Positions 4,561 to 49,959 are shown, counted from the first letter of the stretch. The stretch is DNA of 51,652 nucleotides from Octopus bimaculoides (GCF_001194135.2 NC_068982.1:92565086-92616737); one strand, 5' to 3'. Notes: generated from the sequence alone by a model not told the origin. Translations and numbers: made by a program.

Positions 4561-4755
4561 ACTTATTGTTTTAACATCCATTTTCTATGCTTGAATGAGT
4601 CAGAAATAATTTATTGAGGCACATTTCTATGGCTGGATACTCAGTCCTTTGCACATGAATAACACAATATCCAGACATATTTTCATGGAAGATTTATTTA
4701 TCATTTTTATTTTCATATTAACATTCTGATAAATAGATAAAATAATAACTCTTAC

Positions 4756-20096: not shown

Positions 20097-20199
20097 NNNN
20101 NNNNNNNNNNNNNNNNNNNNNNNNNNNNNNNNNNNNNNNNNNNNNNNNNNNNNNNNNNNNNNNNNNNNNNNNNNNNNNNNNNNNNNNNNNNNNNNNNNN

Positions 20200-24554: not shown

Positions 24555-25571
24555 GTTTGCAATCCAAGAACAGGAAATATCAACCAAATACCTGATGCAC
24601 AAATACCTGATGCAGGAAAAGCTGTAAAATGAGACAACCGATGCAGACTTTATAGAGTTCACGCTGAAGATATCATGCACATCATAAGTAGTTGTCCAAA
24701 AATGTCATCACAAATATTATCTACCAATGAGATATGATGTTGTAGTTAGGACACTATAATGAAATCTGTCAGAAGGAAAATCCCGAGGACAAAGAAATAA
24801 GAACCCACAATATGGTAGAAGCCATAGCCACTCATAATAAAAAGGAATACTGGTGGAGTGTACCAGTGAAGACCAAAATAAACTGTAAGTACATATAATG
24901 ATTTGGGATAGAGAAGAGAAACTGTGCACAGTTGTGGAAATTAGCTGCCCAGTAGGTGTTAACATAAAGCTGAAGATCAGTGAAAAAGAGAACACCTNNN
25001 NNNNNNNTGCCCAGTAGGTGTTAACATAAAGCTGAAGATCAGTGAAAAAGAGAACACCTATGCTGAACTATTGAGAAATCTGCAGTTACTCTATCCAGAT
25101 TACAAGTTCAAGTTTTTACTTGTAATTATTTGGGCCCTGGGATATGTAACACACTGCCTAAATTCCAATCTTGAAAAATTAGGCTTCTCAAAACCAGAAA
25201 GGAGAAAGCTAATTTGAAGACTACAGATCTAATCCATCACTGGAACTGTAAAAATTTGTAAAACGTTCCAGAAGTTTATCATTTAAATATATATATGAGC
25301 ATGTCTAGATATGCATCTATATGCATGAGAATATATACATAAAACATACAAATCTGCACATACATACATACAAATCTGCACATACATACATACAAATCTG
25401 CACATACATACATACATACATACATACATACATACATACAAACAAAAATACCTTGTTGTTGATGTTGAAATTCCAATGAAGGGGCATTGGATCTAGGTTA
25501 GAAACCAGTTCTTTCTCTATTGGCAAGAAATCTTGAAATAAACTGAATAATGACATACATACATACATACA
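24555..25571 (+). mobile_element. R4/Dong-clade non-LTR retrotransposon 3' fragment (Zn knuckle, RLE endonuclease, 3'UTR, (ACAT)n tail)
   Basis: QEQEISTKYL..DNRCRL..EDIMHIISSCPKM..PDIMIWDREEKLCTVVEISCP..EKENTYAELL..ALGYV..ICKTFQKF; the 3'UTR ends GAAATAAACTGAATAATG(ACAT)n. Confidence 0.88.
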
Positions 25572-27410
25572 TTGTACAAAGGTTGTTTGAATATGTTTCT
25601 CCAAGACCACTGCCAAACAAATGGTATGATAACTGATGAACTGACAGGAGGAAAAGCAGGAGTCTGGGGCTCTGTTGAACAGCTCCTCCTTGACAAAACT
25701 GTCCTTAAGGAAGCCAAGCAACATTACCATAATCTCTTAATGATTTGGCTAAACTACAAGGTGGTGTTCAATTAATAGATGATAGAATCACTACACCTCA
25801 TCAAAGTATCAGCTGCTATAGGGAATACCATTGAAAGACTGACCACAACATGGTCCACACAGTTATCACTGACAACTACTAAAGCAACACCTATTTTTAC
25901 AAACAGAATTAAGTTATCAACAGGCATATTCCAGGGTGATTGTTTATCTATAATGTTCTTTGTACTAGTAGTGAATTCCTTGTCAGTCCTGTTAACAAAA
26001 TGCCAAGGCTACATGCTGGGATATGCAGAAAAGAATAAAATTAATGTCATCCATACATTTTTTGTTGATGTCCTAAAGTTTTATTATGGTAATATGATCA
26101 ACATCAAGAGACAATTAGAATTAGTCACAACATTCTCACAAGATATAGGAAAGGAGTTTGGGCAAGATAAATGCTCATACGTGATAGTCAACCGGGGGAA
26201 GATTGTTGACCAGGCAACAAACATGTACATCAATGGCTTGTCTATCTCTCCTATCTCTAATGATGAAAGCTACAAGTATCTCAGAATCAATGAGAATGTT
26301 GCATATGTTGGTGCTGTGACTATAGCCAGAATAATAAAAGAGTACTGGAAAATATGGAACTCAGAGCTGTCAGCATTTAACAATACCTTCCATGCTGCAA
26401 TTATATATCACAATGTTTTTGCAGTACCAGCACTAGTACCAACATTTGGGATTTTGGACTGGCACTTGATGCGATATACAGCCTGGACATGAAAACTGGA
26501 AAGATACTGACCACCACTAGCAACTTCCACATTAACAGCAACACTGATAGGATTTATGTGAGACAAAGTAATGGTAGTAGAGGCATAATGTCAGTCCAAG
26601 CAGCCTTTGAATGTAGCATTGTATCAGTCAAACAACACCTGCTGAACAGTAAAGAAAGAAATGAGTACATACTCAAAAGTGAGAGCAATAACATCCTCAG
26701 AGTTGGAAAAGAATCACTGTGCAGGTACTCTGAGAATACAACTAACCCTCATGCAACCCAAAGGAGGCTGGCCTACCTAAACAGAACCTTAGAGGAGAAG
26801 CAGGTATCATACCAACAAAAGGCAATGCATGGGTACATATCCCATAAGATAGAGGGCAACAACAGCATTGACAGGCAGAGTAGCATCTCTTGTCTTTCAA
26901 TAGATATATTACATCCTACCTAGAAGGATATGCCTTCACTATCCAGGAATAAGAGATAACGACTAAATACCTGATAAACAAGAGAGACAAAGATACCACC
27001 AAACTTCCACATTGTGATAAAAAAAAAAGGTCAACTCTGCTAAACCAGTGTGAAAGATATCATCAACAGCTCCTTCAAAATGTCTACAAGATACTACCTG
27101 CCCCTGAGGTATGATGTAGTTGCAAAGATTATTTACAATGCTATCCACAGGAAGGCCTGCCCTGACATATACATCAAAGGATGTCAGAACCAGCAGGTAT
27201 TCACACCTTTGAAAACAAAGAATATTGATGAAACACCCCAATAAATGCATCAATTCAGTGCAAACATAACAGACCTGATATTGTTCTGTGGGACAGGGAA
27301 CTGTTGTAGAGATCAGCTGTCCAGCAGATGTAATGTGAATGGACAATCAAAAGTCCAGGAAAAAGAGAACATTTATGGTGAATTAATGTAGAATCTCCAT
27401 CTGAGATTCT
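25572..27410 (+). mobile_element. R4/Dong-clade non-LTR retrotransposon, second copy (RT to RLE)
   Basis: EQLLLDKTVL, GIFQGDCLS..F, HTFFVDVLKFY, FGQDKC, YKYL, R..GSRGIMSVQ, AMHGY, LRYDVVAK, PDILFCG..EISCPADVM..QEKENIYGEL (ORFs 25572-27244). Confidence 0.92.
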
Positions 27411-29097: not shown

Positions 29098-29803
29098 NNN
29101 NNNNNNNNNNNNNNNNNNNNNNNNNNNNNNNNNNNNNNNNNNNNNNNNNNNNNNNNNNNNNNNNNCTCTAAATGAGGTATTAACAGTAACTGCACGATAA
29201 AGTGAAGTATATTGCCACTTAAATGTGGCTGACCCCTAGGGGTGGATGTTACTGTTGCTTTTAGCCCCAGGAGGACATCTCCTCCAGCTGGCTTATCGAC
29301 ACACTTCTGTGTCCTGTTTGTTTTGCCAAGGGAAGTTATCCCTCTCATCGTGATCTGTAGCACGAACGGACCCGGGTTTCAGGGTTATTTCAATACACAC
29401 ACACATTGTATGTTTTTATGTCAAGTTATAATAAAAACAACTTAACATTAAACTAATGATTTTCTCAGTATATAAATACACACATATGCATGCTCATATT
29501 ATAAATCTGTGTGTGTGTGTGTGTGTGTTTGTGTGTATACCAGAGAGGTCTTAGACCAACAGGTCTAGGGGTCTGATGATACACCATAAAGCTAAACCCT
29601 TTATGGCCAGGAAACCCAGGGTAACCCCATAAACTGGCCTCGGCCTTCCCCAGTAAAAATCATAGACTGCTCTACTTCTTACAGTGTGCTTCTTCTCTGG
29701 ATTTATGTTTTCTAAAAATTTTATATATATTATATAGATAGATATATAATATACACACATATTTATACATGCATAGATACATATATATGTTTGTATAAAA
29801 TGG

Positions 29804-32554: not shown

Positions 32555-32990
32555 CTGGCGGAATTGTTAGCATGTTGGGCAAAATGATTAACTGATTTTC
32601 CCAGCTCATTGAGTTTTAAGTTCAAATCTCGCCGAGGTTAATTATGACATTCATCCTTTCAGGATCCATAAAATAAGTACCTGTCAAGTACTGAAGTTGA
32701 TGTAATCAACTTACTCCTTTCTTTAAAATTACTGGCGTTGTTCCAAAATTTGAAACCATTATTGTAATTATCATCATCGAGCTGGTAGAACTATCTGCTC
32801 TCAGGACAAAATGCTTAGTGACATTTCTTCCAGGTCTTTACATTCTGATTTCAAATTACTCAAGGTCAATTTTGCTTTCCATTCTTTGAAGGTCCATAAA
32901 ATAAGTACCAGCGAAGTACTGGTGTTGATGTAATCGACTTTCCCATCCCTTAAAATTACTGAATTTGTGACAAAATTTAAAACCATTATT
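32555..32990 (+). mobile_element. Two tandem family A SINE copies
   Basis: Heads at about 32555 (AGCTGGCGGAATTGTTAGCA) and 32780 (GAGCTGGTAGAAC), each ending CAAAATTTGAAACCATTATT. Confidence 0.8.
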
Positions 32991-33234
32991 GTTATTATTG
33001 TTGTTCTTGTTATTTTATCGTTTGTCACACACCATCTATTGTTGTTGGTGTAATACTGGTGCCAGCTGTCCAGGAGCAGTGGAGTGAGGTGGCTCCTTTA
33101 GCTGTCAAGTACTTTTCTAAGTATTCTATAATAATAATAATAATGAATTTATTGTATACAGTGCTCAGGTGCACTACAACTCATCAGAAAAAGTAAATCA
33201 AAACTAGCAGTTCCAAGGAGTGTTGTTTTCTGTA

Positions 33235-33560
33235 TTACCATCATCATCGTCATTGTCGTTGTTGTCGTCTTCGTTGTTGTTGTCGTCGTTGTCATCATCA
33301 TTGTCGTCATTGTCATCATTATCGTTGTCATCATCATCATCATCATCAAAATAGCGAGCTGGCAGAATTGTTAGCAGGCCAGGCAAAAATGCTTAGCAGC
33401 ATTTCATCCATCTTTACATTCTGAGTTCAAATTCCGCCAAGGTTGACTTTGCCTTTTCATCTTTACTAGGTCAATAAAATAAGTACCAGTTGATCATCAG
33501 GGCTGATGTAATCACCTTATCCCCTTCCCTGAAAATGCTCAAAATTTGAAACCATTATGA
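33235..33560 (+). mobile_element. (CAT/CGT)n tract followed by a family A SINE
   Basis: Trinucleotide tract at 33235-33347; SINE head GCGAGCTGGCAGAATTGTTAGCAGGCCAGGC at about 33355; GAGTTCAAATTCCGCC B box. Confidence 0.85.
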
Positions 33561-35597: not shown

Positions 35598-36200
35598 TCA
35601 TTATCATCATCATCCTTATCATCATCATCATCCTTATCATCATCATCATCCTTATCATCATCATCATCATCATTTAACATCTGATTTCCATGCTGGCATG
35701 GGTTGGATGGTTTGACAGGAGCTGGCCAGCCAGGGAGCTGGCCAGACTCCAAATTGTCTGTTTGTGGCATGGTTTCTACAGCAGGATGCCCTTCCTAATG
35801 CCAACTACTTTGCTGAATGCTTTTTATGTGGTACTGGCAAAGGCTACACTTATGTAGCACTGGCACTGGTGCATTTTACATGGCACCAGCACTTGTAAAG
35901 GAAAAGCTTGTATGTAAGGATGACAGCGAATTGTACCTGGCTTGACATGTTTTCTCAAGCACTGTTAATCACCAAAACTCCCAGCCCCTTGTCATTTCCA
36001 CAGTGAGGTCCAGCATCTGAAGATCCTTTCTCACCACTTTGTCCCATGACTTCCTGGGTTGGCTCCTCTACAATTACAGCTCTGCACTTCTTTACACAAC
36101 TGTCCTCATCCATATGCATCATGTGACTACACCAACAGTTTTCTCTCTTGTACACAACATCTGATGTCTCTTATACGCAGTTTTCCTCTTAAATCCTCTT
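35598..36200 (-). mobile_element. RTE LINE 3' fragment with (ATG)n tail
   Basis: (CAT)n at 35598-35672, then TTTAACATCTGATTTCCATGCTGGCATGGGTTGGA; the RT C-terminus reads WCSHMMHMDEDSCVKKCRAVIVE (35955-36155). Confidence 0.85.
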
Positions 36201-36204
36201 TCAG

Positions 36205-36566
36205 GATCCATAAAATAAGTACTAGTAAAGTACTTGTGTTGACATAATTGACTTACTCATCCTTTAAAATAACTGAACTTCTGCTAAAATTTGAAACCAT
36301 TATTATTATTGTTATTTTATTGTTTGTCACACACCATCTGTTGTCGTTGGTGTAATACTGATGACAGCTATCCAGAAGCAGTGAATTGAGGTGGCTCCCT
36401 CAATAGTGAAATACTTTTCTAAGTATTCTATAATTATAATAATAATGAACTTATTGTATACAGTGCTCAGGTGCACTACAACTCAGAAAAATTAACCAAA
36501 ACAAGCATTTCCAAGGAGTGTTGCTTTCAGTATCACCACCACCACCGCTGCCACCGCCACTGCCGC

Positions 36567-36597
<31 letters not shown>

Positions 36598-36735
36598 GTC
36601 ATCATCATCATCATCATCATCATTAAGGCAGTGAGCTGCCAGAATTGTTAGCAAGCCAGGCAAAATGCTTTGCAGCATTTCATCCATCTTTAAGTTCAGT
36701 GTTCAAATTCTGCTGTGGTCAACTTTGCCTTTTTA
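36205..36735 (+). repeat. Second copy of a local duplication of 32890-33460
   Basis: Shared unique junctional sequence, e.g. TTTGTCACACACCATCT..GAGGTGGCTCC..TTGTATACAGTGCTCAGGTGCACTACAACTC..TTCCAAGGAGTGTTG, in the same order with flanking SINE parts. Confidence 0.88.
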
Positions 36736-37516
36736 AGTGGCATCAGCACCTGAAAGGACAAGCCTGTATATGTGGGAGGCAGCGATTTTACTTGGCTGGA
36801 TGAGTCTTATCAAGTACAGCAAATCACCACATCTCATGGTCCCCTGTAATTTCCTCAGTGAGGCCCAGTGTCCAAAGATCGTTATAAAGGGATGAATTAA
36901 TAATTCATATAAAGTGCCACAGATGATTACATGGAGTAAATAAAAATGTATAAAACAATATTTAAAACAAGATATATATAATGTTTAAACATTTATTTGT
37001 GTTAGTTCCTTCCTGTATTATTTACAACTGGAGATTCTGGAATCTACCACTTAGAGCTCTTGGATTACAATGAACAAGTAAAGGCCCACCTCTAGTGGAC
37101 TGATAATATACAACACTTCATAATGTGTCAGAAATTTGTACTAATATTCTGCCCTTTTTATCCTGTTACAATGTGACCCCATTTCCTTCTTGATCCATAC
37201 ATCATTTGGAAATTGCTGATATTTTATAAGATCTTTGCTAGTCTTGTGAAGGGCTGTGAATTTCATTTATTCAGGGTGAAGGCTGGTTCATCCTCTCAGA
37301 AGATGAATTGTTTTATGGTAAAGAGAGTCTCCCCTTCATGGGAGGTGTACCTTCCTGACTTTTTAACTGCCTTTAAGTCTTTTCTTTATATTTTCTGTAA
37401 CCTCCTCATTATTTATTTATGCTATTAAACTCTTGCAATGCTATCTTAATTGAAATTGTTTACATTTTTTATTTGTTTACAGGTAATTGGAAATATCTTT
37501 TTGGCATCATAAAACC

Positions 37517-37583
37517 ATGCTAAACCAAAAGGGAGCTCTTTTGTTTGGTTTTCTTGTACTCTGCTCTGTATTGAGTATAAGCT
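37517..37583 (+). CDS. Signal-peptide exon of an uncharacterised secreted Cys/His-rich protein
   Basis: Acceptor tttgtttacag| opens the exon at 37483; ATG at 37517 in AAAACCATG context; MLNQKGALLFGFLVLCSVLSIS; donor T|GTAAGT at 37583/37584 (phase 1). Confidence 0.8.
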
Positions 37584-38988
37584 GTAAGTATTTTATGAAT
37601 ATAATGCAAGATATTTACTAAAAGTTGTTATTGATGATGATAATATAGCAGAGTTATGATCAGAGATTAGGAGCTATGTGTGGTGTATGCTGAGAATAAA
37701 TTTTTCCCACAAGACTCCAAGGAGCTGATGCTTATTTATGATTTTCATAGCATTAAAAAGAAAAAAAAAAATTAGAGAAAAATCTGTCTGGAGTGAATGC
37801 CAGTCTATTGTGAGTAGCTTTCCTCTGTTAGGTATTGAAATTGACACTGGATAAAGTGTTAATTGCACAGTTTGGCAAAGATGTGAAATAAGAGAAAGAG
37901 ATGTGACCGAATTAGATAAAGTTGTTGGGAAGTGATATAAACTTTTTAGTTTGGTGAAAAGGAGCCATTGTAGAAGCTGGGTGAATAGCGAATGAAAGCC
38001 TCCCAACCAAAGGCACAGTATGGTGAGTGCAGGGTGTTCAGATCATACAGGTTAACTACTTTATATACATGCATTTACTGTAGTCAAAAGTATGTTACAT
38101 TTTTAAAAAGTGGTCAGTTTGGTCACCACATTGAGTACCCACAATCCATTGCTTCTGTGTATTGTTTCCTTGATAATTCTAACACAAAACTTAATCTGGC
38201 AGATAAACTTTTGTTAGTGATTGTGGATTATTTCATCCCAGTATTAGATATTCTAATTTCAGCCTGAATAACTGTATAACCTTATACAACACAGATGAAG
38301 TACATAAAATTATAAACATTTATGTGCAGGATATGTAGAAAAAATACAATGTAGATAACAAAGATAAACTTTAGAAAGGCAAGCTGGTCACTGAAAATAA
38401 AGCATACTTGATATCTAATAAAAAGGTAGAATTATTAACCTTAGTTTATGGAAAGAAACACTGGAGTCTGTTGAGATTTTGATAAACAACAATTTATTCT
38501 TTTCGTGCACTAAAAATGATAGTTGTCTTACTATAAACAACAAAACGTCGAGGGAATTTTTGTTCTTGGTGTTGTTGTAGTATCAGATAAAGTGTGGTTA
38601 GTTGCTTATTGGTTACTGACTTCCAATGTTGTAGGCCCTCCAACTGTTCATTGTTTTTGTGTTGTCAGCTGCAGTCCGCTGTCTCTGTCAGCCAACTTCT
38701 ACAGTGTCAGTCAATGCTTTCTCTGCAACATGCCAAAATTCTGTTTAGTGTTCATGATGTACTGACTTTATACTGCAAGATAGGTTCAGAATGAAGTGTG
38801 CCAAAACACAAAAAAAATCATTATTTGATGTGATGACGTGATCAGTCAGATTTCGTGGATCATGTAGGCAATATGAATTGTGATATTGGGCGATTGCTGA
38901 ATATTCCTACTACAAACCTATCAGGACTAAAAGAATAAAATGGTGGATATTAATAACATAGTTTAAACAACTTCTTGATAAATGAAAC

Positions 38989-39286
38989 CAGGGGTTTTCA
39001 AACTGTGGTCCACGGACCACAGGGGGTCCGCAATGACAAGACAGGGGGTCCGTGGACAGTAAATACTTTTTATGGGCAATTTGATTTTATATATGTTTTT
39101 TTAATCGAAATCTTTTAATTGACAATAAACCTATTTGTTAAATACTGTTAAATAAATAAATGTAAAAATATATGTTATTTTAAGCAAATATTTATGTATA
39201 AATTTCATAAGCATTTATAAGGGGGTCCTTAAGGTAAAGAGTGAAATATAAAGGGGTCTGCAAGTCAAAAAGTTTGAAAACCCCTG
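38989..39286. mobile_element. hAT-type MITE
   Basis: Perfect 16-bp TIR CAGGGGTTTTCAAACT / AGTTTGAAAACCCCTG; 8-bp TSD AATGAAAC / AATTAAAC (7 of 8 match). Confidence 0.92.
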
Positions 39287-39740
39287 AATTAAACAACTTT
39301 TTGATACATTTTGAAGATGTCAAAAATGAAGTGAGACCCAACAGAATTTGAACTTAGAGAAAGAAAAAGATTAATTAGATACTGTAAAATTGTTTCTGTC
39401 TAGCATCAGGCTAGCTATGTTCAAGTAAACCTATAACCAAAGGTATTTAAACCTTGACCACCTTGATCATCCTGTCTTTTTAGGAATATATGAGACTACA
39501 TTATCTAGTATGTCCTTTATTTTTTTTAAGATGGTAAGGTATAATTTAAAGAGATTTGACTGGTCTTTCTTGGAGGTTAAACATCTACCTAGAGGTTCCC
39601 TCAATAATTGTTAGTGTATCTCAAAAGCTTCAGCTTCATCTTCAGTTCTTTCATCACCATAAATATTATGAAAAATTTATTCGTGGTTTTGAATGTTACT
39701 TTCAAATATTTAATCATTGTTTCTTTTATTTTTGTTCCAG

Positions 39741-39848
39741 TTTCCACATGTACACACAAAGGTGTTGACCACCAGCAGGGTGAAAAATGGGGAGAAAAAT
39801 GTGTGAAATTTACCTGTCATAGAGACAAGGTTAAAGTGATACAATCTG
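39741..39848 (+). CDS. Module exon 1 of the secreted Cys/His-rich protein
   Basis: ttttgttccag| ... TCTG|GTAAGT; 108 nt, phase 1-1; (F)STCTHKGVDHQQGEKWGEKCVKFTCHRDKVKVIQS(G). Confidence 0.85.
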
Positions 39849-40139
39849 GTAAGTATTTCATTTAGCAAAGACCAAAGTCTTAGTAAGTAGGAAGGCAGAA
39901 AAATCACAAATCCCTTCAGGTAGATGGCCCTGCTCGATCTATAGAAAAGGCATAGGTAGAAACTCCATAAGATGTACCTGGTGTAAGCTATGGACACATA
40001 AAAGATGCAACAATATCAAAGGAAGGTTAACTGGGAAGGTAGTTTTTGTGTGTGGTAGCTGCACAGGGGCAATAAACACTGAAGATGTACAGAAAACAGA
40101 CTCCATCATATACCAAAGGTAAAAACTAGTAGTAGTTGA

Positions 40140-41065
40140 CAGCTTCCGTTACCTAGGTAACCAAGTCAGTAGTGAGGGTAAATGCACTGAGATCATAGCT
40201 GCTAGAATAAGAATATCCTGGGCAAAATTTAGGGAGGTTCTACCTCTGCTGGTAACAAAGGGCCTCTCACTCAGATTGAAAGGTAGACTGTATGATGCAT
40301 GTGTGTGAACAGCCATGCTACACAGTGGTGAAACATGGGCTGTGACTGCTGAGGACATGTGTAGGCTTGAAAGAAATGAAGCTAGTATGCTTTGCTAGAG
40401 GTGTAATGTCAGTGTGCATACACGACAGAGTGTAAGCACCCTGAAAGAAAAGTTGGACACAAGAAACATCAGATGTGGTGTGCAAGAGAGAAGACTGTGC
40501 TGGTATAGTCATGTGTTCTGTATCGATGAGAACAGCTGAGTGAAGAAGTGTCACATCCTAACAGTGGAGGGAAGCTGTGGAAGAGGTAGACCAAGGAAGA
40601 TCTGGGATGAGGTGGTGAAGCACAACCTTTGAATGTTGGGTCTCACAGAGGCAATGACAAATGACCAAGACCTTTGGATATTTACTGTGCTTGAGAAGAC
40701 CTGTTGAGACAAGCGAAATTGTAGTCATGGCTGATGCCAGTGCTGCCTGACTGGCACCCATGCTGGTGGCACATAAAAGGCAACATTTGAGTGTGGCCGG
40801 TGCCAGTGCCGATGGCACATTAAATAGCATCATTCGAGTGTGGTCGATGTCAGTGCTGCCTGACTGGCTCCTGTACTGGTGGCACATTGAAAGCACACAC
40901 TACACTCACGGAGTGGTTAGCATTAGGAAGGGCATCCAGCTGTAGAAACCTTGCCAGATCAGATTGGAGCCTGTGCAGCCTCCTGACTTGCCAGTCCTTG
41001 GTCAAACCGTCTAACCCATGCCAGCATGGAGAGTGGACATTAAACGACGACGACGACGATGATGA

Positions 41066-41070
<5 letters not shown>
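40140..41070 (+). mobile_element. RTE LINE 3' fragment with (GAT)n tail
   Basis: LPLLVTKGLSLRLKGRLYDACV..LHSGETWAVT..LERNEASML, then the 3'UTR and TAAACGACGACGACGATGATGAT. Confidence 0.9.
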
Positions 41071-41117
<47 letters not shown>

Positions 41118-41429
41118 ATATGTATATACATAATATTTAATATATATGTAAAATGTAATATATATATGTATATATATGTGTATGTTTGTGTGAGTGTGAG
41201 TGTGTGTGTCATTGTGGTTGAACTGTATTTGTCCCAATCATCACTTGACAATCAGTGTTGCTTTGTTTACATCCCTGTAATGTAGCACTTAGGCAAAAAA
41301 GGACCAATAGAATAAATACAAAACTTTTAAAACATATCTACTGGGCTTGATTTGTTCAACTAAACCCTTCAAGGTGGTGTTCCCTCATGACTGTAGTTCA
41401 GCAACTGAAACAAATAAAAGGTAACAGAT

Positions 41430-41556
41430 AGAAGATAATATCCACTTGCCCAAAGTGCCACACAGTGGCACCTTGAGGAAGTGTCTTTTACTATAGCCTT
41501 GGGGCCAACCAAAGCCTTGTGAGTGGATTTGGTAGATGGAAGCTGAAAGAAGCCTG

Positions 41557-41626
<70 letters not shown>

Positions 41627-42030
41627 GTATTTATGAGTATGTGAGTCTGTGTTTGTCCCCGCACCATTGTTTGACAACCAATGCTGGTATGTTTATATCG
41701 CTGTAACTTAACGGTTTAGCCAAAGAGACTGATAGAATAAGTACTAGGCTTACAAAGAATAAGTCCTGAGGTTGATTTTTTTCTAAAACCCTTTAAGGTG
41801 GTGCTCCAGCATGGCCACAGTCAAATGACTGAATCAAGTAAAAGAATACTGGTGAAAGAATGTATTGGTGCAACAAGGAGTAGAGGCATAACTGTGTTGT
41901 TAATAAATTTGTTTCACAGCCACATGGTTCCAGGCTCAATCTTCCTGCATGTCACCATGGGCAAATGTCTTCCTGCATAGCCTCAGGTTGACTTTGTGAG
42001 CAGAATTTAGTAAACTGTGTGGAAGGCTCT
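41430..42030 (+). mobile_element. SINE cluster (family B at about 41430-41540 and 41880-42030, another SINE-like repeat between) with (TA)n
   Basis: GGCACCTTGAGGAAGTGTC..AAAGCCTTGTGAGTGGATTTGGTAG; CACATGGTTCCAGGCTCAATC. Confidence 0.65.
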
Positions 42031-42712
42031 TGGTAGATTGGCAGAACTGTTAGAGAAAGTTTATTAAGTATGACAAACAAAAGTCATAACAGGTTAATAT
42101 AAGGTTGAATATAATTCTGGTGTGTTGGACTAGTTGTTCTTGATATCAATCCTTATGATACAACTTGCTGAAAATTCCTTAAGATCCAAATTAGTAACTC
42201 ATCATCATTATCATCATCATTGTTTCAACATCCACTTTTCCATGCTTGCATGGGTTAGATATTCTATGGCCAGATGCCCTCCCAGTCACCAACCCTCACC
42301 TGTTTCCAGGTGAAGTAATATTTCTCCCATGACCTGACATGTTATCATAGAATATTGGAAATGAATGACACTGCTTGTATGAGAGTGACAATTATTTTAC
42401 AACTATCATGTGATGTCACAATAAGGGAACACACACACACACACACACACACACACGATAGGCAGGACCGAACCCAAAACCATGTGGTTGGGAAACAAAC
42501 TTCTTACCACACAGTCATGCCTGGCCTTATCTAACAAGCCCCAAATATTTTATCCAATGTGTCTTTTCATTTTTTTTAAGACAATAGGATGTGATATGAC
42601 AAAAATTTGGTTGCTCTTTCTAACAGATCTACTGATCATGTAATGATTCCTCATTGGCTTGTGAAATGATGATGTTGATGTTCATATTGTACATATGTTT
42701 GTGTTTTTTTAG

Positions 42713-42826
42713 GTTGTGATGATGGTGCTATTTGCCGAAATGTTGGCAGTCATTGGACCAAAAACTGTATTGGCTATACTTGTGAAAATCACCATGGTAA
42801 ATTCAATTTGAAGAAAGTTACACTAC
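42713..42826 (+). CDS. Module exon 2 of the secreted Cys/His-rich protein
   Basis: gtgttttttttag| ... CTAC|GTAAGT; 114 nt, phase 1-1; (G)CDDGAICRNVGSHWTKNCIGYTCENHHGKFNLKKVTL(R). Confidence 0.87.
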
Positions 42827-43093
42827 GTAAGTTGATATACTTTTTCAATTCAAATTCTTTCATTACACTATATTTCTGGCACACAGAACTCACTAGCAAT
42901 AGTAACCTTGGTTGTCTATAAGAATAGACATGGTGGTCTTGGACAAGAAATTCACTTTGTAACCACCTGGTTTTGGATTCAGTCCAACTGTGTGGCACCT
43001 TTGGCAAATGTTTTGTACAGCTTCAGGCAAACCAATATCTTGTAAGTGAATTTGCAAGATGGTAACTGTGTGGAAGCTCATCATGTATATCTA

Positions 43094-43138
<45 letters not shown>

Positions 43139-43154
43139 GTATCTATCTATCTAT

Positions 43155-43445
43155 CTCAGTGAAGTTCATGGGGAGGGAGTACTGGAGGATCTTAGGAGTT
43201 GAGAAATTCTGTTGGAAAGTGTGTAACCTGATCAAGGGGTCGGTAATAGTGTCAACTGATCTGTAACAACGTTCTTGAGAAGGTAGCTGACTGAGTTAGT
43301 CGTAGATTAAGAGTGTTGACAGCTGCATTTGTAGGTGCAAGAACAGCCCTGTCACGAAGCCAATCTGGTTTTATGTATTCCATTGTAAGATTTGTGTAAA
43401 CAGTAGAAGATAAGTCATCAGAGCTGAAGAATGTGGCCAATATAT
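43155..43445 (-). mobile_element. Helitron PIF1-like helicase fragment
   Basis: VYTNLTMEYIKPDWLRDRAVLAPTNAAVNTLN, then SVDTITDPLDQVTHFPTEFLNS..PHEL; matches Helitron WL.ERAILAP.N and YPTEFLNSL...PPH motifs. Confidence 0.85.
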
Positions 43446-43504
43446 ACACACACACTCACATCTTCCATCTTATATATTATAGATAAAAACACACATACTC
43501 GTAT

Positions 43505-44005
43505 ATTAGGATGTCCCCCCCCCACAAAAAAAATGTATGCATACTTTGAAAGTTTATAAAGTCAGTGTTTATTAAGATATATTTCATTTTAAATTTAATA
43601 GAAATTACAGACAAAATTAAAATTTTTATGAATGTCTATTTTCAAACTGATGACTGTTCTAGTCCAGGCACTGCTGATGACAGGAAATAAGAAAATTGCA
43701 AACTTCAAGAAACATTTTGTTTGATATTTTATCTGTATTCTCATTCAATGGTTACCCTCAATTTGTCAACTGTCATTGGTTTTGTATTGTAAACTTAATC
43801 TTTTAATAGCCCCTTTAAAAAAATCTTGTGGTAAGAGGTCTAGAGAACACAGAGAGTATTCTACTGAACTTCTTCTTCCAGTCTGCCTGTTTGACAAAAA
43901 TCTCATCATATAGGCCCTAACACTATTATGGTAGTATAAAGGTGCCCCATCTTGCTGGAAATAAAACTTCACATTTTCAAAACCATTTTCAGTGCTTGGC
44001 ATGAT
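43505..44005 (-). mobile_element. Tc1/mariner transposase C-terminal remnant (DD37D/maT-like)
   Basis: FYFQQDGAPLYYHNSVRAY..RQTGRRSSVEY..SLDLLPQDFF, a decayed FQQDGAP.H..WIGR.G..WPPRSPDL.P.DFF; TIR-like TAGGATGTCCCCCC at about 43507. Confidence 0.8.
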
Positions 44006-44149
44006 AGATTACCATGGCAAGTTCAAGTAACTGGAACTGGTCACCCATTTGCGTCTCTATTCACCAGAGTAGGATGGTGCGAAAACTTATAAACAATGCT
44101 CTCAAGTAATTTAAATAAAATAAATGGAACTTATACTTTAAATCAGTAG

Positions 44150-44660
44150 ATCACCTTTGGCAATATGCTGTGCTTGAGAAGATGTGTCAAGCCAAGTGAA
44201 ATTGTAGTCGTGGCTGATACCGGTGTCACATAACTGGCACCTGTGCTGGTGGCACATAAAAAACACATTTCGACTGTTGGGCCTCACAGAAGCAATGTGG
44301 TTGCTGTCAGTGTTGCATAACTAGTACCTGTGCCAGTGGCATATGAAAAGCACCTTCCTATCTTTGGGTTTCATGGTGGCAATGACAAATGACCATGACC
44401 TTTGGCAATATGCTGTATTTCAGTAGAAGACCCATCAAGCCAAGTGAAATCATAGTCATGGCAGATACTGGTGTCATGCAAGTGGCATCTGTGCTGGTGG
44501 CATGTAAAAGTGCCCATTACACTCTTGGAGTGGTTGGCGTTAGGAAGGGCAGCCAGCCAAATCAAACAAGTCTGGTGTAGCCCCTCAGCATACCAGCCCT
44601 GGTCAAAGCATCCAACCCTTGCCAGCATGGACAATGGATGTTAAATACTGCTGCTGATGA
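44150..44660 (+). mobile_element. RTE LINE 3'UTR fragment
   Basis: CCTTTGGCAATATGCTGT..GTTGGCGTTAGGAAGGGCAGCCAGC..GCCAGCATGGACAATGGATGTTAAAT..GATGATG. Confidence 0.85.
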
Positions 44661-44667
44661 TGTTGAT

Positions 44668-45023
44668 CAATGATCTCAACTGGGCCCCATATGGCCCCAG
44701 GATAGCCATTAAAGATTTTGGGGGAGTCCACACAAGTGGAATAGTAACTTGGAGATCCACAGTATTATTTTAAGGGTCCATGAAAAAATTTTGCTTTAGA
44801 TGTGTTTATTGCAAGAAGCAGCTGGGTTTCTTTCTCTAACACTTAACATAGTTCAACATGTTTTTTACTAATTTATGCCAGTGAGTGTAGGAAAAACAAA
44901 ATAGGAATTTTGAAAGAAGTATCTATAAGACTATTTTTTAAAACATTGAATGGTTATGGGGCTCCACCAGAATAAAATAGTAATTGTATAGGTCCATAGA
45001 TAAAAAATGTCTGAGAACCCCTG
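44668..45023. mobile_element. Degenerate hAT-type MITE
   Basis: Right end TGAGAACCCCTG; decayed left end CAATGATCTCAAC; putative TSD ATGTTGAT / ATTTAGAT (6 of 8 match). Confidence 0.65.
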
Positions 45024-45053
45024 ATTTAGATATATATCTTTGAAATATTTCAG

Positions 45054-45179
45054 GTTGCAAAGGTCATGACCATAAATGCCACAAAATAGGATCCCACTGG
45101 AATGAGACAGTTCATGGAAACTGTATCACCCGTAAATGCATCAAGAAAGACCATTTGCCAGAAATTGTTAAACTGTCCA
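45054..45179 (+). CDS. Module exon 3 of the secreted Cys/His-rich protein
   Basis: tatttcag| ... TCCA|GTAAGT; 126 nt, phase 1-1; (R)CKGHDHKCHKIGSHWNETVHGNCITRKCIKKDHLPEIVKLS; no stop, so the gene continues. Confidence 0.87.
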
Positions 45180-45410
45180 GTAAGTATCTTTTATCTTTTA
45201 TCTTTTACTTGTTTCAGTTATTTGACTGTGGCCATACTGGGATACAGCCTTGAAGGGTTTTAGTCAAATGAATCAAACCCTGTACTTATTCTATCGGTCT
45301 CTTTTGCCAAATGACTAAGTTACTGGAACATAAGCAAATCAACATTGGTTGTCAAGTGATAGTGAGGAACAATCACAAACACATAGAGACAAGCACACAC
45401 ACACACGCGT

Positions 45411-45446
<36 letters not shown>

Positions 45447-45454
45447 TCTATATT

Positions 45455-45620
45455 TGACGGACTTCTTTCAGTTTCCATGCACCAAATCCACTCACAAGGC
45501 TTTATAGTCAGCCTGGAGCTATAGTAGAAGGTACTTGCCCAAGGTGCTATGTGGTGAGACTGAACCCAGACCGATGTGGTTGGGAAACAAACTTTTTATC
45601 ACACATGCCTGTGCCTTACA
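45455..45620 (-). mobile_element. SINE family B
   Basis: CTTCTTTCAGTTTCC..CCAAATCCACTCACAAGGCTTT..ACTTGCCCAAGGTGC..CTGAACCCAG..GTGGTTGGGAAACAA. Confidence 0.8.
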
Positions 45621-46074
45621 TTATAGTATATTATAAATATTTCATTACATATTTAATATATATTCTAAAGAATATATATTAAATAAATGTTACTGAAGAA
45701 CATTCTTTTGTTCATTCAGGAGATTTTACTGCTATTTTTAGTAGATCAAATTATTGTGCAGAAGCTCTCTCACTGAGTCATTGAAAATTGCTTGAAACAC
45801 ACAGGTAGTGTAATCAAGTAAGAATATAGTCATGAAAGCATTAACTGACACAATCTCTGACAACCAGAGGGTAAATAATTTTAGAGAGTATCAATACTGT
45901 AGTGCAATATCTTCATCATAATTTGGTAGAAAAAAGAAATTCGCATTCTAAACTAATAAAGATAACAACAACATACATACATACATACTGACACATAATA
46001 TATTAAGATATGTGTGTGTGTATATATATATATATATATTAACTTTCACTATCTCTGATAACAAGAGAGTAGAC

Positions 46075-47560
46075 CCCTCACCACCATCACCATCACCAAC
46101 CCCACCAGTTGGTGGGGCTAATATTTCCAGAAATTATAGACTGTCCTACTTCTTGAAAGTCCTGTGACCACTCACTGAAATGTCCCTGGATGTCTGTATG
46201 AGCACTGAAGACCTCTTTAGCAGAATCAGTGAATGTAACTGTTGGTTGTGTAGTGGGTAGGATGGATGTGATATCATTCTATTGATGTTGATTTTGCTGT
46301 AGAGAAATGTGTGAAGATAATCTGTAAGAGTGAAGTTGAGTTTCATGAGGTAAACACAAGGGAACTGAGCCTCCTCTTAAGATTAACCTATGACAGTGAT
46401 TACTTGGATAACTATAACTTATATAGTTCGTCCCCACTGGCCCAAATGAGGAAGACCACTCACCATCACACTGACAGCATAGAAGAGCATCACAGAATGC
46501 TGGAGTGGCTGGACTATACCCATCCAGGATCCAGAGAACAGTAATCAGGTGTAAAAGATATATTGCACATGCAATAGATGCTTGTATAAGAACTGTTTTG
46601 AACCACTTAGACAAGTTCAGTAAGAAATTATATAGGCAGGTTCAAGGAGCTACCATTGTTGTTGGTGCTGCTGGGGATGTGGCTGGCCTCTTTATAGTCT
46701 GGTGGGACAAAAAATTTAGTCAATTCCTAGATGAACACTTTATAGCTGTAATACTATACTGTAGATATGTAGATGATACCAACATTCTAGTTAGAACAAT
46801 ACCAAGTAGTGATACCGAGGGAGCCAAGAGAAGAATGATAGAGCATTTAGCACATAGTTAAAACTATCCATCAGAGTATCAAAGTAATGATAGGCTACCC
46901 AACTAAGCACCCTAACAAAGACTCCCTGTCCTTAATACTGAACTTTGGTTAGATAGTACAAACAAGGTTCCATGCTTCCATTCCTTTTATATGCAACACA
47001 TAGTTTCCAGGTATGTTATTTACAAGAACTCAACTTTATCACACAAATAATAAGATAAACATACTTATACTGGATTTAGTTAGGATAGTGAATAACATAT
47101 TCCTCTTGAGCAACTCTTGTGAAATATTATAAAGACATGAACAGGTCTTTATGCACCATATGCAGTTCTCTGGCTACAACCAGAGAGATGGTGTCAGAAT
47201 GTACAGGGTGGTGGTTGGGAAGAAGTTAGATGACATCATGGGTAAGGATGCCAGTGGAACATACCCTAGATACCAAGGCAATCATTGGAACAGAATACAG
47301 ACAATTACTGATAATGCAAATGGAATAAACATGTGGTACAACACAAAGATATTTCAAGGGGTAATGGTTTGTAGAGGCCACACCATATGGGGAGTTGGCC
47401 CTTAGGTTCAGGAAGGCTATGAAGGTAGCTAAACTCAACATTAAAGTTGTATAAAACCTAAGAGGTTGAAATCATAGTAATGTAAAACATACCCATTTGA
47501 CAAGACCACATGTACTGATAGGAACTGCATTGCATGTACTTTTAATCCTAGTATTAACTG
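46075..47560 (+). mobile_element. Second degenerate copy of the Penelope-like family seen at 660-2567
   Basis: VVGRMDVIS.., QVQGATIVVGAAGDVAGLFIVWWDKK, YCRYVDDTNI, IGYPTKHPN, then TYPFDKTTCTDRNCIACTFNPSINC; ends in (TA)/(TG)n. Confidence 0.9.
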
Positions 47561-47914
47561 TATATATAAGTGTGTGTGTATGTGTGTGTGTACAGTAATA
47601 CTTCACTTTATGAGGACCCACTTTACAAGACCCCAGGTTTACGAGTTTTATTTTATAATAAATATAAAAAGGTTAAACAGCCATTTTGTGNNNNNNNNNN
47701 NNNNNNNNNNNNNGGGGGGGGGCAATGTTGTAACATGTGGCAACACTGGTTCTGATGCATCTACACAGCAACAGAATAAAATGATGGCATAACATTTAAT
47801 TGCTACTATGGGAAATTATTGCTCTGCTTTACAAGCTTTCACTTTATGAGCGATCTCTGGGAACAATTTAACACATATATTGAGTCATTACTGTATATAT
47901 ATATAACTACAGTG

Positions 47915-48005
47915 AGAGGGGGAGGGGGAGAGGGGGAGAGAGGGAGTGAGAGAGAGAGAGAGTGAGAGAGAGAGAGTGAGAGAGAGAGAGTGAGAGAGAG
48001 AGAAG
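47915..48005. repeat. (GA)n/(GAGT)n purine tract
   Basis: Visible. Confidence 0.9.
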
Positions 48006-49959
48006 AGCATACAGCTTCTTAGAGGAAAGTTTTGCAAAATTATTGCAAACATAATTTAAATAGTGGCACAAGGTTAACAGCTGTACCAACAAAGTAGAAT
48101 TACGTTTCAATTTGCTAGGAAAAGAAGTCTCATGAATAAATAATGGGGCCTTTGATTGTTTAAAATGAAAATCAAACTAATTAATTTCATCTTTCATTAA
48201 AAGCACATCAGATATTTCCTACCTTGCCTTTGCAAGTACAAGTCATAAAGTGGGGACAATTTAATCAACTACACTTTCTACATAAGTTTTTTGACCTTAT
48301 GCCTATTAACATTATATTTCACACCTGAGTTATTAGTTACTTTTTAAGGTATGACGTATATTTTAAAGTATGAAGACTTGAGATATCAATTCTTTTAGTC
48401 TGTATCTCAACTCATTAGACAAGGGGTTGGTGATTTACTTTTCACAGCAACCTTTTTTTTCAATAGTTTCTAAATTTCATGTTCATTTTGTCAATAAAAC
48501 CCTTTGATTATCTTTGAGCTGATATATTTTCTCACACTTATTTTGTTTTTTATAAATTTCTTTCAGAATGTTAACAACATGGCAGCTATATTCTGATGGT
48601 ACATTATTTTTTTGAAAATAAAATTTGAATCAGTCAATGTGAACAAAGTGTTTTGTGTAAACTTAATATTTGAACTGACTCATGCTGTATTAAATGTAAT
48701 AATATTTATGTTTGCATAAACATGAAATGATGAAACTAAGAAGACTTGATTGGCTGTGAAATTTTATCAGGTGTTTTACATCTAATAAAAACAAGATGTC
48801 CACGTAGTCAAAATTGACAGCTTTATATAGTAGCTGGATTTGGATGGTTTAAGTGCTAAATGATTAAATCAATTTAAAAAATGATCTGTAAGTATATGTA
48901 TTGAGTGTCATAGTCAAGTGAACAGTCTGAAGTGATATGGACGTTTGATAGAAATAGATTGTTACAGAAGCTAATTAGAGAAATGTGATTGGTAATGAAA
49001 AAAACTTGGAATGATATAGACAGATTATTTATAGAGCACTAGAACAGACAAAAGAAATAATTATTTATCTCATTGGCTCAAAGTCATTATTTTAATAGGG
49101 AATAGCCTGTTGACAAAACCTGGTGGTAGAGTGAAATGTAAGTTGATCCTAGTGAAATTTGAAATCTGAATATAGAGACACAAGCAGAACCTTGTGTATT
49201 TTAAATTAATTAAAATAAAAATACATGAAGAACTGAGATGATTGGTGATATGTGATACTCAAGCAGACCCACCAGTCATGGTAAAACTGAGATTCTGGAA
49301 GTACAATGTATATATATATGCACAACTTACCCAATTTCCTTCTTAAACCATCCCCACTACCCATTATCTCTCTATTGTTATTCCCTCCAACACCTGCATA
49401 ACTGCAGTATTCTGTTGCAGTAATTAAATATGAGCAGAATTGCTTATTTCATCTTTCTTTCTGATACCACTTATCTTTCTCATTATCCAGAACCATTTCA
49501 GTTGATATCTACCCTTCCTTTTTAATACTGTTTTGCTCCACCCACATTTTACATTGATCACCCTTCTGTACCCCAAATTATTTTGCTTTCTCTACCACTA
49601 TACATCTTTCACTCTCCCCATACACTATGTTCGTCTTTCTACTCACACTCTTGCAATCCACCCAGATATCATCTCCCTCTCATTCTTCCTTTTTTTATTG
49701 TATCATTATTACCATTCTGCTACCCTTTACCTCTTTCTGTACTGTCAATCAGCACCTACTCTCTGTTACCTCCCTCCAACTCATATGTATCACTGACCAC
49801 CCTCTCACTCCTTCTCCGTCATTCACTACACCCACCCTTCATTACAACCCAATTTCTACAGTCCATCATTTATTTTCTATACTTTCTCTCCAATATATAT
49901 TTATCATTTATCCCTCAATACTCGCTCTTTATTCATTATATTCACCGCCTCATCCATTC

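What the first reader, a model, noticed from the sequence alone, without database searches (positions are those of the whole stretch)
37483..45179. Hidden multi-exon gene for a secreted, modular Cys/His-rich protein
Four short exons with canonical splice sites and matching phase splice into one open frame: MLNQKGALLFGFLVLCSVLSISF-STCTHKGVDHQQGEKWGEKCVKFTCHRDKVKVIQSG-CDDGAICRNVGSHWTKNCIGYTCENHHGKFNLKKVTLR-CKGHDHKCHKIGSHWNETVHGNCITRKCIKKDHLPEIVKLS... Seen in sequence: a signal peptide, three related modules C-x(5-6)-(C)-x3-G-x2-W-x(3-7)-C-x4-C, and an N-E-T glycosylation sequon. Established: G-x-x-W followed by C-x4-C is typical of the small beta-sheet VWC/fibronectin-type-I/beta-microseminoprotein fold group. 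Inference: I do not recognise this protein; it may be a lineage-specific secreted family (mucus, egg-case, skin, gland or pheromone-type product). A beta-MSP-like protein is known to act as a contact pheromone on squid eggs, so that role is worth testing.
Basis: partly seen in the sequence, partly recalled or inferred. Interest (0 to 1): 0.8.

Follow-up and report, generated by a model that had tools for sequence, protein, structure and literature searches.

The report
Octopus secreted three-module FN1-like protein
The exons are real and form an already annotated but uncharacterised Octopus bimaculoides gene for a small secreted protein made of three fibronectin-type-I-like modules, one of a protein family spread across molluscs, so it is a sound gene call but not a hidden or octopus-only novelty.

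Summary
The four exons exist exactly as described: canonical GTAAGT donors, pyrimidine-rich AG acceptors, and every intron in phase 1. A fifth 8-nt terminal coding exon (48567-48574, K-C-stop) completes a 140-aa protein. That protein is 100% identical to RefSeq XP_014790644.1, "uncharacterized protein LOC106883995" of Octopus bimaculoides, and O. sinensis and O. vulgaris carry 84%-identical orthologues with the same five exons. So the gene is annotated, not hidden.

After the signal peptide, the mature protein is about 117 aa, with pI 9.2, 12 Cys, 12 His and 18 Lys. It reads as three 4-Cys modules, C…G-x-x-W…C-x4-C…C. The last Cys of each module is encoded at the start of the next exon.

An exhaustive HMMER search found relatives in gastropods, bivalves and a nemertean. 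Some are single-unit proteins and some are giant repeat proteins fused to VWA or ApeC domains. A Lottia relative has the same three phase-1 introns.

AlphaFold2 with a 12-sequence alignment gave pLDDT 88. Foldseek matched tandem fibronectin type I modules (E 6e-6). At sequence level only Pfam Fn1_2 (the MIG-18-like FN1 domain) matches relatives, weakly. The β-microseminoprotein link is not supported.

The most likely role is a non-enzymatic extracellular binding protein. Its ligand and tissue of expression are unknown.

The parts
37517..37583 (+). Coding exon 1: ATG plus the signal peptide (M1-S22) plus the first base of codon 23. Donor GTAAGT, phase 1.
   Evidence: identical to residues 1-22 of XP_014790644.1
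39741..39848 (+). Coding exon 2 (108 nt, phase 1-1): F23-G59, holding C1-C3 of module A (C26, C43, C48) and G36-x-x-W39.
42713..42826 (+). Coding exon 3 (114 nt, phase 1-1): C60 (4th Cys of module A), the linker DDGAI, and C1-C3 of module B (C66, C77, C82) with G70-x-x-W73.
45054..45179 (+). Coding exon 4 (126 nt, phase 1-1): C98 (4th Cys of module B), the linker KGHDHK, and C1-C3 of module C (C105, C120, C125) with G109-x-x-W112. The N-E-T sequon lies at 45101-45109.
48567..48574 (+).
   Evidence: needed to reach the 140-aa RefSeq protein; conserved in O. sinensis and O. vulgaris
48617..48622 (+). AATAAA polyadenylation signal, starting 43 nt after the stop codon.
   Evidence: sequence only; the cleavage site was not verified
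39749..42717 (+). Module A at protein level (C26-C60, 35 aa, spans intron 2): C-x16-C-x4-C-x11-C. The model predicts five strands.
42733..45058 (+). Module B at protein level (C66-C98, 33 aa, spans intron 3): C-x10-C-x4-C-x15-C.
45077..48571 (+). Module C at protein level (C105-C140, 36 aa, spans intron 4): C-x14-C-x4-C-x14-C.

Best explanation
This is the Octopus bimaculoides gene LOC106883995. It has five coding exons over 11 kb and encodes a 140-aa precursor.

Shown: exon 1 encodes the signal peptide. The mature chain of about 117 aa (13.3 kDa, pI 9.2, 12 Cys, 12 His, 18 Lys) is one 'A-B-C unit', that is, three consecutive 4-Cys all-beta modules joined by 5-6-residue linkers. The same unit occurs alone, or repeated many times, in secreted proteins of gastropods, bivalves and a nemertean.

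Predicted, not measured: each module adopts a fibronectin-type-I-like fold, and the three form an elongated rod resembling FN1 modules 7-9 of fibronectin.

Inferred mechanism: the protein is a non-enzymatic, disulfide-locked extracellular binding or adaptor protein. By analogy with FN1 modules it would bind extended peptide segments by beta-strand addition. Its cationic His/Lys-rich surface, which is specific to the cephalopod branch, would favour anionic partners such as microbial surfaces, sulfated mucus or matrix. Its fast evolution between octopus species (dN/dS about 0.8) points to an interface role such as host defence, surface or egg coating, or reproduction, rather than a conserved developmental role.

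The tissue, the ligand and the disulfide map are not known.
For: - Gene structure and identity.
- Orthologues with the same exons, an intact frame and all 12 Cys.
- Spliced, polyadenylated homologue cDNA, and a genomic contig showing the same phase-1 introns.
- Family: phmmer against 1.84 billion representative proteins gave 31 hits at E<1e-3, 10 of them at E<1e-10. Named members come from Bulinus, Physella, Aplysia, Haliotis, Lottia, Patella, Elysia, Mya, Ylistrum, Saccostrea, Pinctada, Mytilus and Tubulanus.
- The 12-sequence alignment has 10 invariant Cys.
- Lottia P0028 has introns at the same three positions, all phase 1.
- A 4-Cys regular expression found 332 module matches in 39 family proteins.
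- Fold: AF2 pLDDT 88.2, pTM 0.68, all-beta. Foldseek against PDB gave fibronectin FNI7-9 at E 1.8e-5 to 6e-6, 8-9FnI crystal structures at E 3.5e-3, and NELL VWC regions at E 8e-4, all with probability 1.00.
- Nearest sequence family: Pfam Fn1_2 (PF23003) recurs in relatives at 16-26 bits and passes its cut-off in two Mytilus members at 30 bits. UniRef names those members 'Abnormal cell migration protein 18-like fibronectin type I domain-containing'.
- Domain partners: relatives are fused to VWA or to ApeC, a peptidoglycan-binding domain (PMC9585378).
- Composition.
- dN/dS 0.81, from 7 synonymous and 23 nonsynonymous changes.
Against: - I had no expression data. No transcript-derived contig in the collection encodes the exact octopus protein; only genome assemblies do.
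- The protein alone matches no Pfam family (best hit E 0.096) and no PDB sequence.
- The fold assignment rests on a predicted model. TM-scores are low (0.3-0.5) because the rod-like arrangement of modules differs between proteins. I could not read model coordinates, so disulfide pairing is unverified.
- Profile-profile comparison with the nine N-terminal human FN1 modules is not significant (2-14% probability).
- With dN/dS 0.81 and exon identity (93%) barely above intron identity (86-92%), constraint is weak, so relaxed selection is possible.
- The binding mechanism and the ligand class are inferred by analogy only.
Confidence: 0.6

Rival explanations
1. Matrix or basement-membrane cofactor, like C. 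elegans MIG-18. A small secreted FN1-like protein would dock on basement membrane and assist an ADAMTS protease or another matrix remodeller.
For: The only Pfam family that recurs in relatives is Fn1_2, the MIG-18-like FN1 domain (UniRef naming). MIG-18 is a small secreted cofactor of MIG-17/ADAMTS that localises to basement membranes (PMC4856095). Some relatives carry VWA matrix domains. The fold matches collagen- and fibrin-binding FN1 arrays.
Against: The octopus protein itself scores only 7.7 bits (E 5.3) against Fn1_2. A dN/dS of about 0.8 between congeners is unusual for a conserved developmental cofactor.
Confidence: 0.15
2. Host-defence or surface-coating effector. A cationic, His/Lys-rich secreted protein would bind or agglutinate microbes in mucus, haemolymph or egg coats. 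This is a specific version of the best explanation.
For: The protein has pI 9.2, 10% His and 15% Lys, and the other His/Lys-rich homologue P0005 shares this composition. It evolves fast. Several relatives are fused to ApeC, a peptidoglycan-binding domain (PMC9585378). Cationic Cys-rich cuttlefish egg-case proteins agglutinate Vibrio (PMC4500399), but that is an analogy only. FN1 modules are the known docking site for bacterial adhesins (PDB 3cal, 2rl0 and 2rkz among the fold hits).
Against: All of this is circumstantial. There is no expression, induction or binding data. ApeC, not the FN1-like modules, is the known peptidoglycan binder. Homology to SepECPs was not tested.
Confidence: 0.3
3. 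β-microseminoprotein-like contact pheromone or reproductive signal.
For: It is small, secreted, Cys-rich and fast-evolving. A local motif, C..G….S-x-W…NC-x-x-x-x-C, lines up with the N-terminal part of human MSMB. A β-MSP is reported as a squid egg-capsule pheromone (cited in PMC4500399).
Against: There is no PSP94 (PF05825) match even at E<=10, whereas human MSMB scores 149 bits against that model. hhalign probability is 3.2%. No entry described as MSMB appears among the 50 fold matches listed. The protein has 12 Cys in three equal modules, against 10 Cys in two unequal domains for β-MSP.
Confidence: 0.07
4. VWC/SVWC-type growth-factor or cytokine-like regulator, for example a BMP binder like chordin repeats or a Vago-like single-VWC cytokine.
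For: Relatives give weak VWC (E 0.016), SVWC (E 0.0049) and FnI_RECK (E 7e-4) Pfam matches. NELL VWC regions and VWF/mucin regions appear among the fold hits. C-x4-C equals the VWC motif C-x-x-C-x-C without its middle Cys.
Against: All those matches fall below the Pfam cut-offs. The modules have 4 Cys rather than 10, and there is no C-terminal CC-x-x-C subdomain. The FN1 fold hits are stronger than the VWC ones.
Confidence: 0.08
5. A decaying or functionless gene model: the frame is conserved only because the octopus species are close.
For: dN/dS is 0.81 and exon identity is barely above intron identity. No transcript contig encoding the exact protein is held in the collection.
Against: There are no indels, no stops and no lost splice sites across 423 nt in three species. 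All 12 Cys, the three G-x-x-W motifs and the sequon are retained. A 44%-identical homologue keeps all 12 Cys and is expressed as polyadenylated mRNA. The gene structure is conserved as far as Lottia.
Confidence: 0.07

Closest known systems
Tandem fibronectin type I (FN1, PF00039) modules, e.g. FNI7-9 or 8-9FnI of fibronectin
   Same: Both are strings of 33-40-residue, 4-Cys, all-beta modules joined by 5-6-residue linkers (C4-x5-C1 as in fibronectin), with a G-x-x-W motif between C1 and C2. They are the best structural matches (Foldseek probability 1.00, E down to 6e-6). The modules are encoded by phase 1-1 symmetric exons.
   Different: C2 and C3 are spaced C-x4-C rather than C-x-C, and the conserved Tyr of Y-x-x-G-x-x-W is absent. 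There is no Pfam fn1 match, and profile-profile comparison is not significant. Introns lie just before the fourth Cys instead of between modules. The family is found in protostomes, whereas classical FN1 is, to my knowledge, a chordate domain.
Pfam Fn1_2 (PF23003), the MIG-18-like fibronectin type I domain (C. elegans MIG-18, secreted cofactor of MIG-17/ADAMTS)
   Same: It is the only sequence family that repeatedly matches relatives, aligning over modules A+B. Two Mytilus members exceed the cut-off. MIG-18 is likewise a small secreted protein (PMC4856095).
   Different: The octopus protein scores 7.7 bits against a cut-off of 27. Most relatives are sub-threshold. There is no evidence of orthology or of an ADAMTS link, and the octopus protein evolves fast.
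Unnamed lophotrochozoan 'A-B-C unit' proteins, e.g. Lottia XP_009048046.1 (141 aa), Patella KAK6171318.1 and KAK6171306.1, Elysia ElyMa_002993900, and repeat giants such as Physella XP_059164182.1
   Same: This is true sequence homology (phmmer E 1e-34 to 1e-4). The members share the three-module unit, 10 invariant Cys, a signal peptide, and phase-1 introns at the same positions in Lottia.
   Different: The octopus protein and its 44% homologue P0005 are His/Lys-rich. They have C-x4-C instead of C-x-C in module C, and the octopus gene puts the last Cys on a separate 8-nt exon. Lottia has at least three family genes within 12 kb, while I found no second copy in the window or in the 10-kb flanks of the three octopus loci. 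None of these proteins has a described function.
β-microseminoprotein (PSP94/MSMB, PF05825), including the squid egg-capsule pheromone
   Same: Both are small, secreted, disulfide-rich beta proteins with a local W…C-x-x-x-x-C motif.
   Different: No family-level similarity was detected. The cysteine number and the domain plan differ.

Membership tests
Fibronectin type I module (PF00039) | Module of about 40 residues with four Cys, arranged in tandem with short linkers | tested here: met
   There are three modules of 35, 33 and 36 residues, each with four Cys, joined by linkers of 5 and 6 residues.
Fibronectin type I module (PF00039) | C2-x-C3 spacing and the Y-x-x-G-x-x-W aromatic core | tested here: not met
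   All three octopus modules have C-x4-C. G-x-x-W is present but the Tyr is absent.
Fibronectin type I module (PF00039) | Significant match to the family profile | tested here: not met
   The protein gives no fn1 hit at E<=10. hhalign of the module alignment against nine human FN1 modules gave 2-14% probability. My recalled fibronectin sequence was validated by 9 fn1 hits at E 1e-109.
Fibronectin type I module (PF00039) | Two small antiparallel beta-sheets (FN1 fold) | tested here: met
   The AF2 model has pLDDT 88 and is all-beta, with 4-5 strands per module. Foldseek top hits are FN1 arrays with probability 1.00. This rests on a predicted model only.
Fibronectin type I module (PF00039) | Disulfides C1-C3 and C2-C4 | not testable with these tools
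This needs mass-spectrometric disulfide mapping or an experimental structure.
Fn1_2 / MIG-18-like FN1 domain (PF23003) | Profile match at or above the gathering score (27 bits) | tested here: not met
   The octopus protein scores 7.7 bits, E 5.3. Relatives score 16-26 bits, and two Mytilus members score 30 bits. The family as a whole therefore sits at the edge of this Pfam model.
VWC domain (PF00093) | Ten Cys with C-x-x-C-x-C and C-C-x-x-C motifs | tested here: not met
   Each module has four Cys and no CC motif. There is no VWC hit for the protein, and only an E 0.016 hit in one relative.
β-microseminoprotein (PF05825) | Profile match and a two-domain plan with 10 Cys | tested here: not met
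   There is no PSP94 hit. hhalign against human MSMB gave 3.2%. The human MSMB control scores 149 bits. The octopus protein has 12 Cys in three modules.
Lophotrochozoan A-B-C unit family (unnamed) | Significant sequence similarity over the whole three-module unit with conserved Cys | tested here: met
   phmmer E-values run from 2e-34 to 5e-4. The 12-sequence alignment has 10 invariant Cys.
Lophotrochozoan A-B-C unit family (unnamed) | Shared gene structure: a signal-peptide exon, and phase-1 introns just before the 4th Cys of modules A and B | tested here: met
   Octopus exons are 67/108/114/126/8 nt. Lottia P0028 exons are 64/114/117/131 nt, all introns phase 1. The unknown species of L005 has the same two phase-1 introns flanking exon 2.

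The most novel reading that the evidence does not exclude
The A-B-C unit would be a so far undescribed, lophotrochozoan-wide extracellular domain family. It would show that FN1-type modules, usually regarded as a chordate invention, have ancient protostome counterparts that spread by phase-1 exon duplication. The single-unit, His/Lys-rich octopus form would be a rapidly evolving secreted effector, for example microbe-binding, egg- or mucus-coating, or a chemical signal, possibly with pH- or metal-dependent binding.
Probability: 0.25. Interest if true: 0.55.

Novelty: new variant of a known kind. Interest (0 to 1): 0.3.

Why it matters
As a gene call it adds nothing new, because RefSeq already holds the model. 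The value lies in the characterisation.

An 'uncharacterised' octopus protein can now be placed in a mollusc-wide family of secreted proteins built from FN1-like modules. That family has a confident predicted fold, a conserved exon plan, and informative domain partners (ApeC, VWA).

This gives a concrete starting point for asking what small FN1-like proteins do in molluscs. It also bears on how old the FN1/VWC-type module is outside chordates. Without expression or binding data, the biological role stays open.

Tried and rejected
- Pfam on the protein alone gave only noise: D8C_UMOD E 0.096 and Fn1_2 E 5.3.
- PDB sequence searches with the protein and with the family profile gave nothing, or LDL-receptor noise at E>1.
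- AlphaFold2 with only the two octopus sequences failed (pLDDT 37). It became usable only with the 12-sequence family alignment.
- The word-indexed homology search found almost nothing beyond the octopus cluster. The exhaustive HMMER search was what opened up the family.
- A local iterative module HMM drifted to a short core and was discarded. I replaced it with a regular-expression extraction of modules.
- hhalign against human FN1 modules and against human MSMB was not significant.
- A search for paralogous exons in the window and in the 10-kb flanks of the three octopus loci found none.
- Rfam found nothing in the window.
- No paper in the library names any of the accession numbers of the octopus, Lottia, Aplysia or Haliotis proteins.
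- The Kim et al. 2014 MIG-18 paper is not held.
- Model coordinates could not be read, so I made no disulfide-distance check.
- The species behind Logan runs SRR25158136 and ERR12945500 (homologue P0005) could not be identified.

Full report
**1. Observation**

The coding exons are 37517-37583, 39741-39848, 42713-42826 and 45054-45179. Each donor is GTAAGT, each acceptor is a pyrimidine tract followed by AG, and all junctions are phase 1. Exons 2-4 are 108, 114 and 126 nt, so they are symmetric 1-1 exons.

The ATG is at 37517. Position 37483 follows an 'acag' and may begin a 5'-UTR exon, but I could not test that.

The frame does not end at 45179. The only downstream site that fits the known protein end is 48567-48574 (ctttcag|AA TGT TAA). 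It adds K139, C140 and the stop codon, and AATAAA follows at 48617-48622. A motif scan and a tblastn search of the whole window found no further copies of the module.

**2. Identity**

The 140-aa product is 100% identical to XP_014790644.1, 'uncharacterized protein LOC106883995 [Octopus bimaculoides]'. A 140-aa orthologue with 84% identity is annotated in O. sinensis (XP_029648886.1) and O. vulgaris (CAI9717303.1). The window is 100% identical to GCA_001194135.2 chromosome CM046602.1. The gene is therefore already annotated, though not characterised.

In the two other species all five exons, the frame and the splice sites are kept, with no indels. There are 7 synonymous and 23 nonsynonymous differences, giving dN/dS of about 0.81. 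CDS identity is 93%, against 86-92% in introns and 84-89% in the 2-kb flanks. Constraint is therefore weak overall. Even so, all 12 Cys, the three G-x-x-W motifs, 11 of 12 His and the N-E-T sequon are unchanged.

**3. Anatomy of the protein**

Exon 1 encodes a classic signal peptide: MLNQK, a 16-residue hydrophobic core, then S-I-S. This is judged from sequence by the -3/-1 rule, because no SignalP was available.

The mature chain of about 117 aa weighs 13.3 kDa and has pI 9.2, 12 Cys, 12 His and 18 Lys. Counting cysteines shows that the structural modules are offset from the exons:
- Module A is C26-C60.
- Module B is C66-C98.
- Module C is C105-C140.

Each module has the form C…G-x-x-W…C-x4-C…C, and the modules are joined by linkers of 5 and 6 residues. 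The fourth Cys of each module is the first full codon of the next exon. The 8-nt terminal exon is what gives module C its fourth Cys.

**4. Relatives**

The word-indexed search saw only the octopus cluster. The exhaustive phmmer search of 1.84 billion representative proteins gave 31 hits at E<1e-3 and 10 at E<1e-10. Named members come from:
- gastropods: Bulinus, Physella, Aplysia, Haliotis, Lottia, Patella, Elysia;
- bivalves: Mya, Ylistrum, Saccostrea, Pinctada, Mytilus;
- the nemertean Tubulanus.

All are 'uncharacterized' or 'hypothetical'.

Some are single units of 141-185 aa with a signal peptide. Others repeat the unit or its modules up to about 20 times, and some of these carry an N-terminal VWA domain or an internal ApeC domain. 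A 12-sequence alignment of single units has 10 invariant Cys. A 4-Cys regular expression finds 332 module matches in 39 family proteins.

The closest non-Octopus relative, P0005 (44% identity, 12 Cys, 12 His, 17 Lys), comes from a 1,092-nt poly(A)-tailed contig. That contig joins the parts homologous to exons 2-5 without interruption. A genomic contig of the same species shows exon 2 bounded by phase-1 introns at the homologous positions.

The Lottia gene for P0028 has exons of 64, 114, 117 and 131 nt with all three introns in phase 1 at the same positions. Two further family genes lie within 12 kb of it. The gene plan therefore predates the split between cephalopods and gastropods.

**5. Fold**

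With two sequences AlphaFold2 failed (pLDDT 37). With the 12-sequence alignment it gave pLDDT 88.2 (about 95 over the mature part), pTM 0.68, and an all-beta structure with 4-5 strands per module.

Foldseek against PDB put tandem fibronectin type I modules first:
- FNI6-9 and FNI7-9 models, E 6e-6 and 1.8e-5;
- 8-9FnI crystal structures, E 3.5e-3;
- the 2-3 and 4-5 FnI pairs.

NELL VWC regions (E 8e-4) and VWF/mucin assemblies came next. TM-scores are low (0.3-0.5), as expected for flexible rods of several modules. I could not read model coordinates, so the disulfide connectivity is unverified.

**6. Sequence-level family tests**

- The protein alone hits no Pfam family and no PDB sequence.
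- In relatives, the recurring match is Pfam Fn1_2 (PF23003) at 16-26 bits. Two Mytilus members pass the 27-bit cut-off at 30 bits. UniRef calls them 'Abnormal cell migration protein 18-like fibronectin type I domain-containing protein'.
- MIG-18 is a small secreted cofactor of the ADAMTS protease MIG-17 that localises to basement membranes (PMC4856095).
- Classical FN1 (PF00039) is not matched. hhalign of the module alignment against nine human FN1 modules gives 2-14% probability, aligning only the G-x-x-W region.
- β-microseminoprotein is not matched either: no PSP94 hit, and hhalign gives 3.2%, while the human control scores 149 bits.
- The VWC defining motifs are absent.

**7. Interpretation**

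Shown: this is a real, annotated gene. It encodes a signal peptide plus three 4-Cys modules, belongs to a mollusc/nemertean family, has a conserved exon plan, and evolves fast between octopus species.

Predicted: each module has an FN1-like fold, and the three form a three-module rod.

Inferred: the protein is a non-enzymatic extracellular binding or adaptor protein. FN1 modules bind extended peptides by beta-strand addition. The cationic His/Lys-rich surface seen in the octopus proteins and in P0005, the ApeC and VWA partners of relatives, and the high dN/dS together lean towards a defence, coating or other interface role. A conserved developmental role like that of MIG-18 looks less likely. 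The cationic, Cys-rich, Vibrio-agglutinating egg-case proteins of Sepia (PMC4500399) are an interesting but untested parallel. I found no support for the β-MSP pheromone idea beyond general resemblance.

**8. Caveats**

No expression data were available. Only genome assemblies, and no transcript contigs, carry the exact octopus protein in the collection. A weakly constrained or rarely expressed gene therefore cannot be excluded. The species of P0005 is unknown, and its cDNA contig lacks an in-frame signal peptide.

**9. Verdict**

The gene is already annotated, and the protein is a divergent variant of a known module type inside an uncharacterised lophotrochozoan family. Interest is modest.

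Noticed in passing
window 4718-5119 (-): A 133-aa open frame encodes a PDZ domain (PF00595, E 8.7e-11). It is probably an exon of an unrelated neighbouring gene on the minus strand.
   Followed up: partly
window 46279-46861 (+, inside intron 4) and 1232-2230 (-): Two mutually similar ORF fragments that look like retroelement pieces (the motifs ...QVQGA.I....AGDVA.LF..WWD.K... and Y[VG]DD). Neither has a Pfam hit. One of them sits inside the gene's last intron.
   Followed up: partly
window 10200-11119 (-) and 25779-26923 (+): Further long ORF fragments of likely transposable-element origin, with no Pfam match at E<0.01.
   Followed up: partly
window 32883-33457 and 36197-36733: Two copies of a dispersed repeat of about 575 bp (79% identity) lie upstream of the gene. 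Another repeat in intron 2 (41465-41845) matches, in inverted orientation, sequence beyond the end of the window (L001 29457-29776).
   Followed up: no
window 483-492, 16253-16467, 20097-20199, 22490-22499, 24998-25007, 29098-29165, 47691-47713: Seven runs of N (assembly gaps), several of them flanked by TA/CA microsatellites. The one at 47691-47713 lies in intron 4.
   Followed up: no
L002 31350-31815 (O. sinensis, 9.5 kb downstream of the orthologue): A second called gene with a 141-aa product begins with a signal-peptide-like exon (MYTQSFFIVCCLSSLLCFISAG). tblastn shows no similarity to our protein. The rest of the gene lies outside the fetched locus, and the corresponding O. bimaculoides region lies beyond the window.
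   Followed up: partly
L004 1-620 (Logan SRR25158136 cDNA contig of homologue P0005): The 5' 620 nt of this polyadenylated contig do not encode a signal peptide in frame (stop at 595-597), although exons 2-5 are spliced as expected. It may be a chimeric assembly or an alternative 5' exon. This remains unexplained.
   Followed up: partly
L006 21-2668 (-), 4204-5631 (+), 10001-12039 (+) (Lottia gigantea KB200521.1): Three family genes sit within 12 kb, separated by tubulin-like gene fragments. In Lottia the family forms a tandem cluster, and Patella and Elysia locus tags also suggest clustering.
   Followed up: partly
P0018 (JGI/IMG contig, 492 aa): This relative combines two fibronectin type II domains (PF00040, E 1e-16) with the FN1-like modules, which recalls the FN1/FN2 gelatin-binding region of fibronectin. 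Its organism is unknown.
   Followed up: no
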